A stretch of 63,237 nucleotides of DNA, counting the filler, from Choristocarpus tenellus KU-1152 (lineage: Eukaryota > Protista > Phaeophyceae): NCBI GenBank assembly GCA_964200185.2. It is 10 parts of 10 records of this genome, joined end to end, with 100 filler letters (N's around TTAATTAATTAA, not from the genome) between each part and the next. Parts side by side here need not be neighbours in the genome. Positions count along the whole stretch, not along the records: positions 39,424 to 48,409 come from CAXNAD020004121.1; 9 more parts are not named here. The stretch is one strand, 5' to 3'. Below, one piece after another: positions 39,424-48,409 of this stretch. The first letter of the stretch is position 1. Every line of letters starts with the position of its first letter. The notes beneath the pieces are model-generated. The model worked only from the letters and a program-made list of their open reading frames with translations, was not told the origin of the DNA and searched no databases. The translations under genes were made by a program, and so were the position numbers.

Positions 39424-39433
39424 GATTCAAGAT

Positions 39434-39611
39434 GTCCCAAAGTATCTGGGAGGGGGGGGAGGTCTACACCAGGTTGTCCATTTGGCCCCAAATGAGGAAA
39501 AGTGCATTTATATTATCCATCCGACATATGCAACTAAATCACCCAAAAATGGTGGCATGAAAAAATGGACCCCAAAAGGACAGCCGCCACCCCCCCCAGA
39601 TACTTTGGATC
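39434..39611. mobile_element. MITE family 2
   Basis: GTCCCAAAGTATCTGGG...CCCAGATACTTTGGATC with AGAT/AGAT 4-bp TSD. Confidence 0.88.
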
Positions 39612-39788
39612 AGATGTTCAAGTTGACCGCAGCACCAGTTGGGCGTCACAAAATTATGTTGGGCAGAGGGTGCCATCACAGGTGTCCCTTTCCAAGTGTT
39701 GAGAAATACTACGTACATTCGTGCTCACAATGACGATGTGGTCATCTGTCCCCCCACCTATTCAAATACTATGTTCACATGCCTTCAG

Positions 39789-42700
39789 ATCGCCAATACT
39801 GTGCATATCCCACTCACAACTTGGCCCTTCCCGTCATGGACGCTCTGGAGGGTGTCACACATGCACTGGCAAACGACAACACCAAGGTTGGACTTGTATA
39901 GAACTTGTGCATATGTTTTGTGTTCGTTCTCTTTAGCTTCTGAGGTTATTACCACCATGTTTTGTCCTTTTCATGAACCATAAAATGCGAATGTCGGTGG
40001 ACGAGGACAGACTTCTCAGATGAAGGAAATCCAAATCCAAACTGTGAAGTACAAGTGCAGTAGTGTTGACAATTTTATCCCCGTGTCATGCACAGAGTAC
40101 GTTGAATTACCCCTACAACTTTATGAAAGTATTCTCTGGAATGCCTAATGTTTCCCGGATGCCATCAAATCAGTAACTAAAAAATCACACCCCCTCCGAA
40201 TCGGTGCCCTCTTGCTCGTATGCGTATCATCTAGTTACACATGTGTACATTTGATGTTATCAGTAATGAGCCACCTCTTCCTTGTGTGCGCGCGTATGTG
40301 CTTGCATGTACGCATACAGGAGTATATGGAGCAGTACCAGTGGGTCAGGATGGTCCTTGGTAAGCCTTTTTGCACTCTGCTCGACTTGAATAATCAATAT
40401 AATATTGGTGTGTGATTGGTTGGCTTCAATTTGTGCATTCATCTACCAATTTGTTACTTGGTTTGTGTCCTACCTGCAAGGCTTGTTTGTGCTACACCCA
40501 CACCATACTCCACAGAAGGATTTTGGGTGCGTACGTTTCATGTATGTATCTTGTGCACGAACCATATATCAGACAACCTGAGCCTATCAACTGTGTCTAC
40601 TCATTTTTCTCTCAGGGTAGGGCACAAAGCAAACAATATTATGGCCCTGGGTATTCAGTCCCACACTGCAACTATTAGTAGGGCAGGCTTATTTCTGAAA
40701 TTTTTGCTATTCTCAAGATGGCGATGGTGATGATTCTTGCTGTCTCTGTCTTCTCCAGGAATATATTCACCTTAAGCAAAGGCCGCAAATATTTCTACAA
40801 TACCATTTCGTATCTCTCTGTACCTGCACCCAGGACGAGGAGGGAGATGATATTATGCTCCTGATGTGCCAACTATTGTGACTGAATCTCTCAACCTTGT
40901 AAAACAATATTCACCTCTGTCCCCACCCCTCCAACCATTGTCCTGTGTGCCCGCATTCCAATTTTCGCGAACTCAACAACTCTCGGTCGAACGTCACTCC
41001 TAGGTCTCTCACCGGTATATATACACTTTTTTGGGCACCTCTCCTTTCCTGGAACTGTACTTGGAGAGCAGAAACTGGGTCACCTGGTCAGGATTGGCCT
41101 AGTGGAGGGATGGGATGATCCCCGACTGCCAACTATAAGAGGAATCATGAGAGCGGTGAGAGGGATATCGATAAGGAATAGGGTTAAGGATATTAGGGAT
41201 ACATTTGAAAATGGTTAAGTAAAATTATGCTCGTGAGGTTGTTAAATCTCTTATTGTCTTTTCTCCTATATCTACATAGCATGCGCTATTAGTACGTTGT
41301 TTGCTGATGTTTTGTAATCCTCCCACACAAGTCGACTATTGTTCGTGACAAAATATATTTCCAAAGTACATCGTTCACGTCCAAGACAGACAAATTTTGA
41401 CAATAAATTTCCAATACTTCGCACAATCAAAGAGTTCTATTTGCCTCGGCACAGCGGATCCTCTTGGTTAGGTGATAGGTAACGTTCGCTACAAAACAAT
41501 GCTTCCACTAACACAACGTTATTTTCCCACTATTCTCATTCTAGAATGACTACATAATGCAAACAAAATGTGTGCTCTTGTCTCTTGAGGTTGATTATAT
41601 ATAATATGCCGCGTTATCTAGTATAGGTTCCAGTATTTCAAAGCAATATCCCATAGAACTCACCCTAACAATTGCAAGGAAACGTTACGGTCAGGATCTC
41701 TATTTTACTTTGAAACTCACATGGTATACTCGTTTGAAAAGTACATTTTCTGTGACCGGTCTTTTTCCAAACCTTAATCCCTCACAGACTCGTACACTCT
41801 GTGATACTTCGGAAAAATGAATTTGCCGTGTGTAGAACGAAGAGTAGAATGAGTTAATCGGATCGAAGAGAGCTGTGGGGCGAGACACCAGTAGTTACAG
41901 TTAGGAAAATTTAAATATGCAAAATATCCTGAGTACTCTGTGTATATAGTACTGGGTATAGTTATGATAATGTTGGTATTTACCTGGGGCTTGCAGGAAA
42001 CCTTGAAGTCTTATATTGTACACATCCCACAAACCTCGACTCGCTCTGCTAGTTGCTAGCGGCTGCAAGTTCTTACATCCTCTTTGTCCTTCAAGAATCA
42101 TAATTTGGGTATATATATTTTTTCGCTCACTCTTTGTCTATGATGTAGAGGACAAAATGCTTCCTTACTTCATTTATAGATCCAGTAAGCTAAGATGTGC
42201 CTCCAGTGGTAGACTGTGGTGATGTTTGATAGCCATTCCTATGTTTCATACAAAACGCTTGGAGCACATGATGCCCAAGATGTATCTATCATGCCATATA
42301 CAACCATGATCGCGTGAGAAATAAAGTATCTCTTTTGATCCCCTCATGTAAAAAAAAAATCTACAAATTACAATTTTCTGTCACTTCTGTGCTTCTCCAC
42401 CTCTCCCTCAATCTCGAGATCGTCCTCTTCTCCTTATCCCAGGGCATGTCACTCGAAACATTGAAGGAGTTCCTAGTGTCTCTAGGGGGTGGGAGTAAGA
42501 TAAATGAGGCACCATGGTCACTGGTGTGGGGAGCAAACCGCAAACACTGGGAGCAAACGGCTCCTAGATACATGGCAATCACCAGGTCTGTGCATTGCTA
42601 TATAAGCTACAGCATTCTATAAGGAGGTGCCGTTGAGCCTAAGGGGCCTCTGTGACTGCCTTCTGGTACATTTCATGTCCTTGCAGCCCTTTGGAGGGCG

Positions 42701-45700
42701 ATTTCGGGCATGCATAGATCATCTTTTCCACCTCTTCTTCAGCCGTAGGCTCCTCATTTTATAACTGCATTTCAGGCATAGGATTGTGTATCAGCCAGAA
42801 GATTTGAAAAGCCCCGCCGTATATTCGAAATGTCCACAGTCGACCCCTCTCTAGAGACCACCATGACTCTGTGTGTGTATGCTTCCCTTCTTCATGAGTG
42901 TATATTATCATTTGTGAGAATATTGTTGTGAAAACCTCAACACCAAGAACAACAGCGCATATATCGTACTTCAAGACAAATGGATTTTGGATAAACATTT
43001 AAATGTACTAGTGTCACGTGGGATACTGGAACGCATTAACCTATTAACCTGACCCTTTTTGTGGTCATAGCCAGGGGTGACACAGAAAATGTGAAATGCT
43101 TCAGAGTTAATTTTTTCTCCCAACACAAAACTGAACTACGGCATGTTCTCCGCACAACTTTCCCCTCCATGAGTATGACCATACTTGTATACACAACCAC
43201 ATATATGTGGATGACTGCCCGCCCCAGCTCCTTCTCCACCTCCAATATTTCGTCCATAGAGAGAGAACGCTCGCCTGACAACTGCTATGGCGGAAATATT
43301 CACTCACAGGGCGAGCAAGGTGGTGATGAGTGTGGCTAACATACCTCCAGGCACCAGCACGGTGGCCATATCGCTTCACCCCCGAAACCCCTCCCTAGGG
43401 GAGAGAGACCTCCACATCTCAGACAGCATAATCATAGAAGGTAGGCGGAGTAGTAGCTGATACTAGAAGCATCAAACGGGTGATATAGTTGATTGCTATG
43501 TGTAATTTTTTTAAATCTATTTGATGAGGACCATGACACCTTCTACTGCTGGTAAAATGGGGCAGGAGACATGGTATGAAAAACAACTTTTTGAGCAATA
43601 GAATTGCGGAATGATACACCAAGCCAATAGGGCAAACTTGGCCCGCAATAGCTCCTACCCCCCAACCTTACGACTTCAAATTATTATGAATTTTTGTAGG
43701 AGCTTTCTTGATACGAAAAACATATTTCAAGTAGGACTCCTGTCATATCTCCCTTGTCCACGCCTTTCTCGAATAACCTATTCTTCGCATCAATTATAAG
43801 AGAAAACCAATGACTTGACGAATACTCACGTTTAGTCCGCGAACAGTTGTGAACAACTTATCCAGCCCTAATGTCCTATCAAGGTACAGAATAGTTGGAT
43901 GATGTATATTTGCATCGACGACCAAGTGGATACTTGGAAGTCATTTGAATGTTGTTGACATACAAAGTCGCTACAGTTTATTGATACAACTACATTATGC
44001 ACTTGGTGAATACTAACGGTGTACTCTCCCAGATATCATATATGTACGATGAATTTCATTAATCAGATGTCTTTTAGGGGATGGAGGATAGTTAATGCAA
44101 GGGTCCTTGGTGTGTTCGCGGAGAAAGTGTCTGATCGTGTGTTTCAACACATACATGCGTATATATTTATATAAAACAAAAGCAGGTATGTGCCTGTGTA
44201 CAAGGGACGACTCTTGCGTACACAATACATCTTAGTTAACCGTTTGTGCTAGTCCGCTCCAACTTCGATTGGTTCTACCCCCCACCTCGTCAAGTGTTCA
44301 CGTTTTGTTTCATCAAGTGTTTCATCCCTTCTTCAAGTAAACTAATGTCACATGCGATCAAAATCTTTTGTGAACATCCTGATTAAGTAAGCGACTTCTG
44401 ACATCGTACACGATATTATCTATCGACCCAAGATGCAGTGCCATAAGATAGACTAACCCTAGTCGTAATTCTATACTGCAGTATTTCGTGATGGAAATAG
44501 GGGGATCCTGGGGGTAATGTTTCCTCTTTATCATCTACAATTCTCCGCATTTCCTTTGATATGCATTGTTTGCGCTTTTATCCCTTAGTCCTCAAGTATA
44601 AAAGTAATGTGATCAAAGCTTCGCTGTGAACGTAGATAGAACATGCACCCCTCTCTGCGTTGAGGTCATCAAAGTGCCCTCCAAGCACGATGATATACGT
44701 TGGACAGGGATTTAGCACAAATCATCTACTGCACACGACCTCAAACGACTATTCAGGGGATGACGCGGACAAGTTGCTAGAGAATGAGGAGATTACTTTG
44801 CTGAGATGGACAAGTGTCAAGATCTCAGCCATTTTAATGGAGGGAGAGGAGGACCTACAGGGTGAAAATCATGTGACCAAGGTCGAGAGGTAACTTGACA
44901 GAGAAAAACACTCTAGGTGAAACTAATGCATACTTGCAAAGCGTTTTAAATGGAAATTGTAGTGAACGGGTGGGGGGGGAGGCAGTGACAGACCGAGGAA
45001 TCAAGCATGTTTGGGAAAAAAACAATTCTCAAGGTTAAAGGTTCTGATGATGAGATGGAATTAGGAACGATGATCCTACTATTCCCATCCCCAAGCACTT
45101 GTGAAATGCAAAGTAGGATTTCAGAAGGTGCTTCACCAAGCAAACCAATGAGATCACGTGTGTCAGAGCGTGACATGAGTTGGAGGGAGCTTGGTGTCTA
45201 GGACTGTGTTCTGGAGAGGGCTATGGTGCTACGGGTTCACAGATCAACTTTCTGGTGTAGTGTGGAGAAATTACATCCACCTTCTTTGTACTTACGGTGA
45301 CAGTAATTTGAGCCTGTGTTAGAATGCTGTTTCTGCCCATTTCACTCCCTATCTATTCCTAATGGAGCACCTGTTGAGGTCTCCCCCTGGCAAGTCCCCT
45401 TCACTCCAGCGTGTTTTCACTCCCCAGGGTCTGATCTCATCTTCATATTTCCAATGACAGTCGCTTAACATTATCTCTTTCCATACTACTGCGTTTGTTG
45501 AGCCTCCTGCAAATCCATGGGATACGGTTAGGAGAGTTCAAACTGCCCACCATAACTTACAAACAATGCTTCCTTTTTCTGTGTAGTTCCTGGGAACATA
45601 CATCGTGACTAATTCTGATGTGTCTAGAAGCAAGCTGGTTCCTTTTACTTTTGGATCTGCCTTGAGCAGAAGATACAATCCACATGAATAATGTTGATTC

Positions 45701-47839
45701 ATATCAACCAATGAGAAAACATGCACTACTTTGGGGGAGATCTATACCATTCGCCCTCAGTGCCATCTTAGTGCCCCTTCAGAGCTTAACTATCAAGTTT
45801 GAGCAAGGCACTCACCTCAACCTTTCCCAATCCCCTGCCATATTGCTAACTAACATTCCACGAATGCTGTCTTCCAATGCTACTCTAGCAACTACCTTCC
45901 AGTATTTGAATTCAAAAAGAAGAAGAAAGCTGTTACTTGGTTGGCCAATCTCTCCAATCTAGTGTCCCTCAAGGTAAGATATCCACCTGGGCAGTCTTTC
46001 TTCTCATGCTTCTTTGCAGAGTGTGCTTAGTACAGCAATGCTTCAGTATGCACCATCAAGAACATTGACTTTCAAGGCATCGCCGATATTTTAACGAATT
46101 TCTGGGTCTCCTCAACATTGTTTAAATTTAAAATATTTTAGCAACTAGAGGAACCACACCAAACCACTCATCCCTAGAGACCAGTCTGACCTCAGCAGTA
46201 ACCCTTGTCAAGGTTTATCGATGCAAGGACTGGAGATATCCCCTTGACTAAAAACACCCAATCCTAATTGTGACTATCGCTTTTGGGCAGCTTGTACATT
46301 ATGGATCACTCCTAACCAAGCCCCGCCTTGAGGAGAGTGACAGTGTCAGCGCGTTTGTCAATCCACAAGTCAAGTGAGTACAAGGGACTCTTACTCTGTG
46401 AACCTCTCAGTATGGGATTGGGGAAATTGGGATCCAAAAGAGTAAGTCAATTAACCTGCTCGGATACATTAAACAAATTGCTGGTACGGATGGACTTGTC
46501 TTATCAAGGTGCAATGAGGCTTCTTGGAAGCTGATTGGACGCAATTTTTGACATGGTGGTCGTACCCGCATATTTTCGTGAAACTGTCCGCTAGATCTCT
46601 GTATGAGATGGAGATATTCGTGTATAGCTCTTTCAACATTGAACTTGCTAGGATCTGCATTGCAAATTTTAGATGCTGAAGATGATCGTGCATTGCAGAA
46701 CGTCCGTTGTAAACCCTTGACATGCCTGAAGAAATGTTCTTATTTGTGTTTCGGCTTGGGTGGTCATGGGCATAGTACAGTTCTATTTTGTCACTATATT
46801 TTTATTTTTGTAGTGATACTGGTCTTAGCAGGTGTCCCCTTTCACGTCAATCACCTGGAACAATTGACTCATCAAGCAGTCGCAAGGTGCATGCACTAGC
46901 CAAGGCCTTCAAGTAAGCTTCCTTACAGCGCCACAATTTGAGTCGCTTCCATCATGCACTCTGATATACACAATATCCCAATCTCACTATTTTTTAAAAT
47001 AATAAACTGAGTTTGACCAGGGGGGATGATTAATTTTGGCTCAGTTGCATCCTCAAAATATATCACTGTCGCCGTAAGTTGTGCTCTGCATATGTCACGA
47101 TTGCTGTGCGTACAAGCATAAACACAGGGTGACTGTTTCATGTGTTTGGCGTGTAACAAAGAGTCGAAACACGCTATTAGTAGTGTTATGATTAGTCACA
47201 TAGTGGAATTGTCGTAATACTCAGCGACAATATAAATGGCTGTGATCGTGGAGACCAAGCCCCTAACAAGATAAATATTTCCATTATTCGATGCCTATAT
47301 ATCCTGCGGGCAGCTCTTGGTGACGCTTCATATTTCGCGAGCTTTCAATATTACTTGGAATGCATGAAAAAAGAGTAGTCAATTCTTCTCCATTGAAATA
47401 TAATCTCTGAAAAGTTTGTAACTATTTTCAGCTGGCATGCCCTAGTTTGCTATGATTGTATCGTGCTGATCCTTTTGCCATGGAATAGACCTTTCCCATT
47501 TGTCGAGAAGAGAGTGCCACAGCAATACCCTGCGACATTGGTAAAGAACAATATTTTCTTGGACTGATTTTTTTGTTCATACAAGGCTCAAACTCACTCT
47601 CGATCTGGACAAGCGTTGCCAACAATTCCATGGTCAAACTAAACGGAGTCTGTGTATATAGTTTGGTACCTTATATTTCTCTTTTGTTTTTATCGCCCTA
47701 AACTCTGTCTCTTTATGTGTTTACAATTGCGTGCGAATTTTGAATATTGCCGACAATATCCTAAAATCTACAAAGGACGGAAACGGAAGCCCTTGGGGAT
47801 CCAGAAATGCGCCATCTCCATATTAACGACGTCATACAG
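39789..47839 (+). CDS. Cytosolic-type glutamyl-tRNA synthetase-like protein with degenerate active site (internal fragment)
   Basis: Exons 39789-39886, 40320-40359, 41004-41155, 42443-42585, 43310-43440, 44757-44889, 45889-45973, 46291-46373 and 47776-47839 are all GT-AG, phase-compatible and stop-free (~309 codons). Motifs AYPT..A.PVMDALEGVTHAL, GLVEGWDDPRLPTIRGIMR, APRYMAI, LHPRNPSLGER, EEITLLRW, VTWLA, LLTKPRLEE...FVNP and GDPEMR....DVIQ follow the eukaryotic GluRS catalytic and beta-barrel anticodon-binding domains in order. Confidence 0.9.
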
Positions 47840-48409
47840 GTAGGATGTGTTCTGTTTGCTGGAATATTATTGAATAGATTTCGAGACGTGTTCTTTCTGT
47901 TGGTTGACATAGTAAGAATTCGGAGTATTGAAATCAGAACTATCCACATTTCCAACAACTCAATATTAGTACAAAAAAGTTACCCTACGCTCGTAATCAT
48001 AAGAATTATAATATTTTTTGAACTAGTCGTAGAGGCGAAACCATACGACGATGTAACTGACATTTGAGAAACGTTGACCTCAACATGTTAACGTTTTGTT
48101 ATGAAAATGTTATGTCGTAGAAAAAGTGGAAAAGTTATTCGCAATAATACGTCGGACAAATCAAATCCGATTTGTGGCGTACAAATCAATTTTCCAATGA
48201 ATCAATAACCGTTAATACCATACATCTCAGCTATGCACGTTGATCGCATCCTCACAAACCAAATTTTTAAGAGTTAACTCTTTCACCTGTGAATTCGAAT
48301 CTTTGTACTCATTCCTATTTCTTTGAGTGATGTGAGACAAATCTTCCCACAACAAGAGGGTCAAAGTATCTGCGGGGGAGGGGGGTGTTGTGAGGGTGCG
48401 CCCGTTTCG

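What the first reader, a model, noticed from the sequence alone, without database searches (positions are those of the whole stretch)
39789..47839. Intact multi-exon GluRS paralog with its active site selectively erased: candidate pseudo-synthetase
Seen: nine exons splice at canonical sites into ~309 stop-free codons, so the gene looks maintained rather than decayed. The translation aligns without gaps to the eukaryotic GluRS consensus as I recall it: [32 protein letters not shown] becomes YPTHNLALPVMDALEGVTHALANDNTKEYMEQ, and EYSRLNL..TVLSKRKL becomes FFGHLSFPGTVLGEQKL. Established: the Tyr of PTY and the Arg of THxxR bind the glutamate side chain, and LSKR is the KMSKS-equivalent ATP-binding loop of class Ib synthetases. 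All three are replaced, while structural motifs (EGVTHAL, GWDDPRLPTIRG) and the whole anticodon beta-barrel are kept. Inference: a catalytically dead or re-specified GluRS fold retained for another job, such as tRNA binding/sensing, a multisynthetase-complex scaffold or a different ligand. It would be conceptually analogous to HisZ, the GCN2 HisRS-like domain or GluQ-RS. I do not know of a described example in algae.
Basis: partly seen in the sequence, partly recalled or inferred. Interest (0 to 1): 0.82.

Follow-up and report, generated by a model that had tools for sequence, protein, structure and literature searches.

The report
Fast-evolving GluRS-like gene lacking catalytic residues
This contig carries part of an intron-rich gene copied from the cell's glutamate-charging tRNA enzyme; it still reads as an intact protein but has lost the residues needed to do that chemistry, so it is probably a non-catalytic "pseudo-synthetase", though expression and relatives could not be shown.

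Summary
Nine exons (39789-47839), all bounded by AG/GT, join into 309 stop-free codons. These align end to end with eukaryote-type cytosolic GluRS, at best 42% identity and E 5e-89, with no gap at any exon junction.

Catalytic residues that are invariant in canonical enzymes are replaced:
- the glutamate-binding Tyr is His;
- the Arg equivalent to T. thermophilus Arg205 is Ala;
- the KMSKS-type loop LSKRK reads LGEQK.

"Selective" erasure is overstated. The whole protein sits on a branch about seven times the median length. It has replaced 30 of 72 columns that are invariant in stramenopile GluRS, at similar rates in both domains.

Neutral decay deep enough to explain this would leave the frame and all 16 splice sites intact with probability 1e-8 or less. 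Structural residues (Gly, Pro, Trp, hydrophobic) are also kept more often than polar ones (p = 0.012). I therefore favour a maintained, non-catalytic GluRS-fold paralog (about 0.6) over a decaying duplicate (about 0.27).

Open points:
- the gene is cut at both contig ends, so the HIGH motif and the C-terminus are unseen;
- no RNA data were available;
- no ortholog was found in any collection searched;
- a separate canonical GluRS in this genome could not be checked.

The parts
39789..39886 (+). Exon 1 of the part seen (phase-1 start, so an upstream exon lies off the contig); encodes (D)RQYCAYPTHNLALPVMDALEGVTHALANDNTK
   Evidence: AG/GT borders; Pfam PF00749 positions 180-205, E 2.3e-5; aligns to 7wai/7wrs GluRS and to E. 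coli GlnRS 204-229
39815..39820 (+). Codons His9-Asn10, in place of the Tyr-Asp of PTYD (E. coli GlnRS Tyr211-Asp212; T. thermophilus GluRS Tyr187)
   Evidence: Alignment. Tyr is 33/33 and Asp 31/33 in diverse canonical GluRS. Role of the Tyr: PMC2978374
39869..39883 (+). Codons Ala27-Asn-Asp-Asn-Thr31, in place of the invariant RTTEY; Ala27 stands where GluRS has the glutamate-carboxylate-binding Arg (T. thermophilus Arg205)
   Evidence: Arg205 belongs to the strictly conserved Glu-binding network (PMC2978374). The partner Asp (T. thermophilus Asp195) is kept as Asp17
40320..40359 (+). Exon 2 (EYMEQYQWVRMVLG)
   Evidence: AG/GT borders; tblastn match to canonical GluRS; present with 0 differences in X2 contigs
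41004..41155 (+). Exon 3 (LSPVYIHFFGHLSFPGTVLGEQKLGHLVRIGLVEGWDDPRLPTIRGIMRA)
   Evidence: Pfam PF00749 positions 228-274; 7wrs E 2.8e-9; an X2 contig covers 40342-41418 with 0 differences
41060..41074 (+). KMSKS-equivalent loop: Leu65-Gly66-Glu67-Gln68-Lys69, in place of L/M-S-K-R-K
   Evidence: Ser and Lys are 33/33 and Arg 32/33 in canonical GluRS. None of the 150 best matches in 1.84 billion representatives, nor of the 120 word-search hits, carries this loop
41108..41143 (+). Retained motif GWDDPRLPTIRG
   Evidence: Conserved columns kept
42443..42585 (+). Exon 4 (GMSLETLKEF...APRYMAIT), end of the catalytic or stem-contact part
   Evidence: AG/GT borders; 7wrs residues 290-335, E 3.6e-4
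43310..43440 (+). Exon 5, start of the first beta-barrel of the anticodon-binding domain (HPRNPSLGER)
   Evidence: Pfam PF03950 positions 10-50, E 8.6e-6
44757..44889 (+). Exon 6 (DDADKLLENEEITLLRW...), with a 4+2-residue in-frame insertion in a variable loop
   Evidence: AG/GT borders; tblastn; insertions at model residues 218-221 and 225-226
45889..45973 (+). Exon 7 (NYLPVFEFKKKKKAVTWLANLSNLVSLK). The acceptor is at 45887-45888; the AG at 45901-45902 would break the frame
   Evidence: tblastn to canonical DFKKTK..TWLA
46291..46373 (+). Exon 8 (LVHYGSLLTKPRLEESDSVSAFVNPQV)
47776..47839 (+). Exon 9 (KTETEALGDPEMRHLHINDVIQ), the last exon seen. The exon that should encode the LERRGYF-type C-terminus was not found in 47840-48409
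   Evidence: three-frame reading

Best explanation
The contig holds the middle and 3' part of a nuclear, intron-rich paralog of the eukaryote-type cytosolic glutamyl-tRNA synthetase. Its nearest relatives are ochrophyte/stramenopile GluRS. After duplication the copy evolved very fast and lost the polar residues that bind glutamate and ATP: the Tyr187-, Arg205- and KMSKS-Lys-equivalents. It kept an open frame, all splice signals and the fold-determining Gly, Pro, Trp and hydrophobic residues of the Rossmann-fold second half, the GWDDPR..PT.RG connector and the two beta-barrels. Shown: the gene structure, the homology, the replaced residues, the long branch and the intact frame. Inferred: the protein is made; it cannot form Glu-AMP or Glu-tRNA; and it acts through binding rather than catalysis. 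The likeliest partners are tRNA, bound through the retained anticodon-domain fold, or the canonical GluRS or synthetase complex, as a non-catalytic subunit.
For: Nine AG/GT exons give 309 stop-free codons. The model aligns end to end with canonical GluRS at E 5e-89, with no gap at any exon junction and only three in-frame indels. The catalytic replacements sit at columns that are 100% or 97% invariant in 33 diverse GluRS and have documented roles (PMC2978374). The terminal branch is 2.17 against a median of 0.31. Identity is 39% where stramenopile GluRS share 60%. A neutral simulation at the divergence needed for this many replacements (d = 0.13-0.26) gives, at d = 0.13, P(no stop) of 0.02, P(splice sites kept) of 0.02 and P(no frameshift) below 1e-4, a product of 1e-8 or less. 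Among 90 near-invariant columns, structural residues are kept 31/44 and polar ones 20/46 (Fisher p = 0.012). The exon 3 DNA is identical in a second sample.
Against: There is no RNA evidence: the only runs holding the locus are DNA. No ortholog or similar motif was found in 1.84 billion representatives, the word search, or viral and metagenome contigs, so conservation across species is unshown. Retention of canonical residues is nearly flat across conservation classes (about 0.58), which is also what a pseudogene would show. The 5' half (HIGH motif) and the last exon are off the contig and could carry defects. The structural-versus-polar split was chosen after seeing the data.
Confidence: 0.6

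Rival explanations
1. It is an unprocessed pseudogene: a duplicated GluRS gene that is decaying, or a once-functional divergent paralog that died recently. Its frame happens to be still open over the 929 nt seen.
For: Retention of canonical residues is flat across conservation classes. Invariant columns are lost equally in both domains. No ortholog was found anywhere searched. No RNA holder was found. The gene is seen only in part, on a 9-kb contig of a fragmented assembly bounded by repeats.
Against: At the divergence needed to replace 26-42% of conserved columns, an intact frame, 16 intact splice sites and no frameshifts have a joint probability of 1e-8 or less. If decay is recent (d of 0.02 or less), only about 4% of residues should have changed. 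That cannot explain seven replaced catalytic residues, which need at least 9 nucleotide changes in 21 nt. Structural residues are kept preferentially.
Confidence: 0.27
2. It is an active enzyme with changed chemistry: a re-specified GluRS fold that activates or transfers another substrate, as GluQ-RS (YadB) does. The retained Lys69, two residues downstream, or other residues would replace the KMSKS lysine.
For: The amino-acid pocket residues are replaced rather than deleted (Tyr->His, Arg->Ala, Tyr->Thr), which could make a different, less basic pocket. Lys69-Leu70 of the loop and the Asp195-equivalent (Asp17) are kept. Rapid evolution is compatible with a new function.
Against: The Lys->Glu charge reversal sits at the position invariant in 33/33 GluRS and in all 270 relatives fetched here except one frame-shifted fungal fragment. 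The ATP-side segment RTTEY is wholly replaced. The HIGH motif cannot be inspected.
Confidence: 0.08
3. It is the organism's ordinary, only cytosolic GluRS, and is merely divergent.
For: Some canonical GluRS are nearly as divergent overall: P0067 and P0040 retain only 78-80% of conserved columns.
Against: Those divergent enzymes all keep the Tyr and the loop Ser-Lys, and differ from the canonical residue at most by Arg->His at one position. This sequence is the only one of more than 270 examined that lacks all of them. Its branch is about 7 times the median in a stramenopile set.
Confidence: 0.03

Closest known systems
Eukaryote-type cytosolic glutamyl-tRNA synthetase (class Ib; Pfam PF00749 + PF03950/PF20974; solved examples 7wrs, 7wai)
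   Same: Homologous over all 309 residues seen. Same order of elements: second half of the Rossmann fold, the KMSKS-loop position, the GWDDPR..PT.RG connector and two beta-barrels. Nearest sequences are ochrophyte and oomycete GluRS at 38-42% identity.
   Different: Lacks the Tyr, the Arg and the loop Ser-Lys-Arg that are invariant in the family. 30 of 72 stramenopile-invariant columns are replaced, and the branch is about 7 times longer.
GluQ-RS / YadB (bacterial paralog of the GluRS catalytic domain)
   Same: A GluRS-derived paralog that no longer charges tRNA(Glu) for translation. It is the only GluRS-like protein listed in the review PMC9437257.
   Different: YadB is bacterial-type, lacks the anticodon-binding domain and is still catalytically active: it activates Glu and transfers it to queuosine. 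This gene is eukaryote-type, keeps the anticodon-binding domain and has lost the activation residues.
Non-catalytic synthetase paralogs: HisZ and the HisRS-like domain of GCN2
   Same: An aaRS fold kept after loss of aminoacylation residues and used for binding or regulation. This is an analogy from established knowledge, not tested here.
   Different: Those derive from a class II HisRS and have known partners (HisG; uncharged tRNA and the kinase domain). No partner, fusion or ligand is known for this gene.
ThrRS-L (TARSL2) and other duplicated eukaryotic synthetases
   Same: A lineage-restricted nuclear duplicate of a cytosolic synthetase, thought to serve the multisynthetase complex rather than bulk translation (PMC9437257).
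   Different: ThrRS-L retains aminoacylation activity and canonical motifs. This gene does not retain the motifs.

Membership tests
GluRS/GlnRS superfamily (fold and homology) | Significant sequence match to the class I E/Q catalytic domain (PF00749) | tested here: met
   Exon 1 E 2.3e-5 (23.9 bits, cutoff 23.4). Exon 3 E 5.3e-5 (22.7 bits, just under the cutoff because only a fragment was scanned). The joined model scores E 5e-89 against P0226 in a local blastp.
GluRS/GlnRS superfamily (fold and homology) | C-terminal anticodon-binding beta-barrels (PF03950 / PF20974) | tested here: met
   Exon 5 hits PF03950 at E 8.6e-6. Exons 6-9 align to the same region of canonical GluRS, but at only 36% identity.
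Catalytically competent GluRS | KMSKS-type loop with its lysine (x-L/M-S-K-R-K) | tested here: not met
   The loop reads LGEQK. Ser and Lys are 33/33 and Arg 32/33 in canonical enzymes.
Catalytically competent GluRS | Arg that hydrogen-bonds the glutamate side-chain carboxylate (T. thermophilus Arg205) | tested here: not met
   Ala27. Role taken from PMC2978374.
Catalytically competent GluRS | Tyr contacting the substrate (T. thermophilus Tyr187 / E. coli GlnRS Tyr211) | tested here: not met
   His9. The Tyr is replaced by Met or Leu in many archaeal GluRS, so this alone is not disabling.
Catalytically competent GluRS | HIGH motif and the N-terminal Arg (T. thermophilus Arg5) | not testable with these tools
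   The 5' exons lie off the contig. No upstream exon is found in 39424-39788.
Maintained pseudoenzyme (as opposed to pseudogene) | Expression and purifying selection (transcripts; orthologs with dN/dS below 1) | tested here: inconclusive
   No RNA run holds it and no ortholog was found. The only evidence is indirect: an intact frame and splice sites against a neutral simulation, and preferential retention of structural residues.
GluQ-RS (YadB) | Truncated bacterial-type catalytic domain without an anticodon-binding domain, with activation residues kept | tested here: not met
   Eukaryote-type sequence with the anticodon-binding domain present and the activation residues lost.

The most novel reading that the evidence does not exclude
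A eukaryote-type GluRS has been turned into an expressed, selectively maintained pseudo-synthetase in an ochrophyte-like alga. It would be a full-length-style GluRS fold that no longer activates glutamate but still binds tRNA(Glu) or the canonical synthetase. It could then act as a sensor, sequestering factor or non-catalytic subunit. It would be the first described non-catalytic paralog of eukaryotic GluRS.
Probability: 0.4. Interest if true: 0.65.

Novelty: new member of a known kind. Interest (0 to 1): 0.45.

Why it matters
Dead or re-purposed synthetase paralogs such as HisZ, the GCN2 HisRS-like domain and YadB have repeatedly turned out to be regulators or new enzymes. For GluRS, the one review checked here (PMC9437257) lists only the bacterial, truncated and still active YadB. 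A eukaryote-type copy with its anticodon-binding domain but no activation residues would add a new case. It would also offer a handle on tRNA(Glu) handling in algae. The case is also a useful caution. The 'surgically erased active site' impression came from comparing with a remembered consensus. Measured against real relatives, the whole protein is accelerated. The argument for function therefore rests on frame and splice integrity, not on selective residue loss.

Tried and rejected
- RNA evidence: the single run search found only DNA holders, X1 and X2, plus a DNA run of another organism in the same study, X3.
- Read laying: it confirmed the DNA in X2. X3 gave one read from 2% of the run, so there was no ortholog and no dN/dS.
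- Ortholog hunt: exon 3 against 1.84 billion representatives, a word search seeded with oomycete GluRS P0147, and viral and metagenome contig scans. These returned only canonical GluRS/GlnRS at 62% identity or less to exon 3. None carried a GEQK-type loop.
- The odd loops found were explained. P0047 and P0075 read LGKRH but are otherwise canonical. P0138 reads LSERK but is a frame-shifted fungal fragment. P0002 is a tandem-repeat artefact.
- Intron positions of the Phaeothamnion canonical gene (L001) do not coincide with those here, so they say nothing about origin.
- Exact look-ups of two window ORFs found no public contig.
- No exon 10 and no upstream exon were found on the contig. A 38-nt 'intron' giving ISRRVLSVG* and an AG at 48119-20 giving KKWKSYSQ* were considered and judged unconvincing.
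- Giant-virus origin was considered and rejected. The gene has eight long spliceosomal introns, and the viral contigs hold only ordinary GlnRS/GluRS.
- No RNA family or tRNA lies in the piece.
- Joined model: it was not handed to any remote search or folding tool. There is therefore no whole-protein Pfam scan, no structure prediction and no fold search.
Full report
**What is in the sequence.**
The piece (39424-48409) is a 9-kb contig of about 42% GC. On the + strand, nine segments are each preceded by AG and followed by GT: 39789-39886, 40320-40359, 41004-41155, 42443-42585, 43310-43440, 44757-44889, 45889-45973, 46291-46373 and 47776-47839.

Joined, they give 929 nt and 309 codons without a stop. 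The other two frames of the joined sequence are full of stops. Exon GC is 0.507 against 0.385-0.445 in the eight introns, which are 317-1402 nt long.

Exon 1 starts in phase 1, so at least one exon lies upstream, off the contig. Exon 9 ends in phase 0 at ...HINDVIQ. Canonical enzymes continue there with LERRGYF, and no convincing continuation exists in the remaining 570 nt. The gene is therefore seen only from the 'YPTY' strand of the Rossmann fold to near the end of the second beta-barrel.

**What family it belongs to.**
- Scanned exon by exon, exons 1 and 3 match Pfam PF00749 (class I Glu/Gln synthetase catalytic domain, profile positions 180-274 of 314). Exon 5 matches PF03950, the anticodon-binding domain.
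- Against solved structures, the best matches are eukaryotic GluRS 7wrs and 7wai, then GlnRS.
- The joined model was used only in local scripts against proteins fetched here. It aligns over residues 2-309 with canonical cytosolic GluRS, best 42% identity and E 5e-89 to P0226.
- No gap falls at any of the eight exon junctions. The only indels are in-frame: a 4+2-residue insertion and a one-residue deletion in the barrels. This makes the splice model credible rather than fitted.

**The catalytic residues.**
HMMER aligns exon 1 without gaps to E. coli GlnRS 204-229 and to 7wrs/7wai. It aligns exon 3 to the loop region.

| Model residue | Canonical equivalent | Invariance in 33 diverse GluRS |
|---|---|---|
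| His9 | GlnRS Tyr211 / T. thermophilus GluRS Tyr187 | Tyr 33/33 |
| Asn10 | Asp | Asp 31/33 |
| Ala27 | GluRS Arg (T. thermophilus Arg205; Cys229 in GlnRS) | Arg 32/33 |
| Thr31 | Tyr | Tyr 32/33 |
| Gly66 | loop Ser | Ser 33/33 |
| Glu67 | loop Lys | Lys 33/33 |
| Gln68 | loop Arg | Arg 32/33 |

The loop L-S-K-R-K therefore reads L-G-E-Q-K.

According to PMC2978374, Arg205 is part of the strictly conserved hydrogen-bond network that recognises the glutamate carboxylate, and Tyr187 contacts it. That paper also notes that the Tyr is replaced in many archaeal GluRS and is not critical. The partner Asp (T. thermophilus Asp195) is kept here as Asp17.

It is established knowledge for class I synthetases that the KMSKS lysine stabilises the transition state of amino-acid activation. 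A Lys-to-Glu reversal at that position is the strongest single argument against activity. Ser-to-Gly alone is not disabling, because P0047 and P0075 have LGKRH and are otherwise canonical.

**Is the erasure selective? Not really.**
- Against 21 stramenopile GluRS, which share 60% identity over this region, the model is 39% identical. In the catalytic part the figures are 42% against 70%. In the barrels they are 36% against 50%.
- Of 72 columns strictly invariant in those 21 enzymes, 30 are replaced. That is 25 of 58 in the catalytic part and 5 of 14 in the barrels (Fisher p = 0.77).
- The fraction of consensus residues retained is about 0.58 in invariant columns and about the same in less conserved classes. 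Canonical sequences tested leave-one-out keep 0.95-1.0 of invariant columns.
- In maximum-likelihood trees the model has a terminal branch of 2.17 changes per site against a median of 0.31. It attaches, without support, among ochrophyte GluRS: brown algae, Chrysoparadoxa, Phaeothamnion, Nannochloropsis and marine transcripts.
- The right description is a generally accelerated GluRS paralog whose catalytic signature is gone. It is not a canonical enzyme with three surgical substitutions.

**Gene or pseudogene?**
A flat retention profile is what neutral decay gives. Neutral decay to this depth, however, is incompatible with the state of the frame.

Mutating the coding sequence in silico gave these results:

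| Neutral divergence d | Residues changed | P(no stop) | P(32 splice bases intact) | P(no frameshift, 1 indel per 10 substitutions) | Product |
|---|---|---|---|---|---|
| 0.13 | about 25% | 0.02 | 0.02 | below 1e-4 | about 1e-8 |
| 0.20 | about 35% | 0.004 | 0.002 | — | about 1e-12 |

Conversely, if the copy died so recently that an intact frame is likely (d of 0.02 or less), only about 4% of residues should have changed. That cannot account for seven replaced catalytic residues, which need at least nine nucleotide changes in 21 nt.

A second, weaker line of evidence comes from 90 near-invariant columns. Gly, Pro, Trp and hydrophobic residues are kept 31 of 44 times, and polar or charged ones 20 of 46 times (odds ratio 3.1, p = 0.012). 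That split was chosen after seeing the data. This is the pattern of a fold that is maintained while its chemistry is abandoned.

I conclude that most of the divergence accumulated while the reading frame was under selection. Whether the gene is still alive today cannot be shown.

**What could not be shown.**
- Expression: the only public runs holding the locus are DNA, namely two samples of one organism plus a DNA run of a second organism in the same study.
- Laid on 39650-45649, the second sample's contigs match with zero differences across exon 2 and exon 3, so the odd loop is not an assembly error. The other organism gave one read from 2% of its run. There is no RNA, no ortholog and no polymorphism to test.
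- Relatives: exon 3 searched against 1.84 billion cluster representatives found 407 relatives. The best real ones are canonical GluRS at 62% identity or less, and none has a similar loop.
- A word search seeded with the oomycete GluRS P0147 returned 120 canonical enzymes, including six brown algae, Chrysoparadoxa and Nannochloropsis.
- Viral and metagenome contig scans matched only through the conserved VEGWDDPR peptide.
- The paralog therefore looks lineage-restricted, or its relatives are unsampled or unannotated. Whether the same genome holds a canonical GluRS cannot be tested with these tools.

**How it most likely works.**
- Most likely, at about 0.6 (inference): it is a non-catalytic GluRS-fold protein. 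It cannot bind the glutamate carboxylate because the Arg is missing. It cannot stabilise adenylate formation because the loop Lys is missing. It keeps the connector motif GWDDPRLPTIRG and both barrels. Any activity should therefore be binding, either of tRNA through the anticodon-domain fold or of the canonical GluRS or synthetase complex as a non-catalytic partner.
- Rival, 0.27: an unprocessed pseudogene, or a recently dead divergent paralog.
- Rival, 0.08: an enzyme with re-specified chemistry, in the manner of YadB.
- Rival, 0.03: the organism's only GluRS.

**Comparison with the known.**
It is a member of the GluRS/GlnRS superfamily by homology. It fails every testable feature of a catalytically competent GluRS, and the HIGH motif could not be tested.

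The review of duplicated synthetases read here (PMC9437257) lists only the bacterial YadB/GluQ-RS as a GluRS-like protein. YadB is truncated and active, which is the opposite of this case. Functionally the nearest analogies are HisZ and the HisRS-like domain of GCN2. Those analogies come from established knowledge and were not tested here.

There is therefore no whole-protein family scan, no predicted structure and no fold search.

**Verdict.**
The 'dead active site' reading is well supported for the part seen. 'Selectively erased' is overstated. 'Maintained' is supported only indirectly. It is a moderately interesting candidate pseudo-synthetase that needs transcripts, the missing exons and orthologs before it can be believed.

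Noticed in passing
window 39437-39459, 39584-39608 and 48362-48385: A G-rich 22-24 nt motif (CAAAGTATCTGGGAGGGGGGGG) sits at both ends of the contig. An inverted copy lies 128 nt inside the left end, forming a hairpin-like, MITE-like pair. This dispersed repeat probably explains why the assembly breaks here.
   Followed up: partly
window 42611-42706 (intron 4): A short dispersed repeat. Word depth in the two DNA samples is 3-6 times that of the flanks. Many different contigs match at 80-95% identity with small indels and run on into unrelated sequence.
   Followed up: no
window 43535-43579, minus strand (intron 5): A weak reverse-strand peptide (..YHVSCPILPAVEGVMVL..) resembles the exon-1 motif Y.F.CPIVD..EGVTHAL of canonical GluRS (tblastn E 0.05-1.5 against several queries). 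It may be a relic of an inverted exon copy, or chance.
   Followed up: no
protein P0002 (999 aa, from the representative search): A tandem-repeat 'protein' whose unit contains LPVRYHSFGQISFPGTT. It matched exon 3's PVYIHFFGHLSFPGT eleven times. It looks like a translated satellite, and the match is judged to be chance.
   Followed up: partly
locus L001 3844-3885 (Phaeothamnion confervicola GluRS gene, CAXNAC020002564.1): The deposited gene model needs a 42-nt 'intron' to reproduce its protein, which may be an annotation artefact. The model is also 5'-partial.
   Followed up: no
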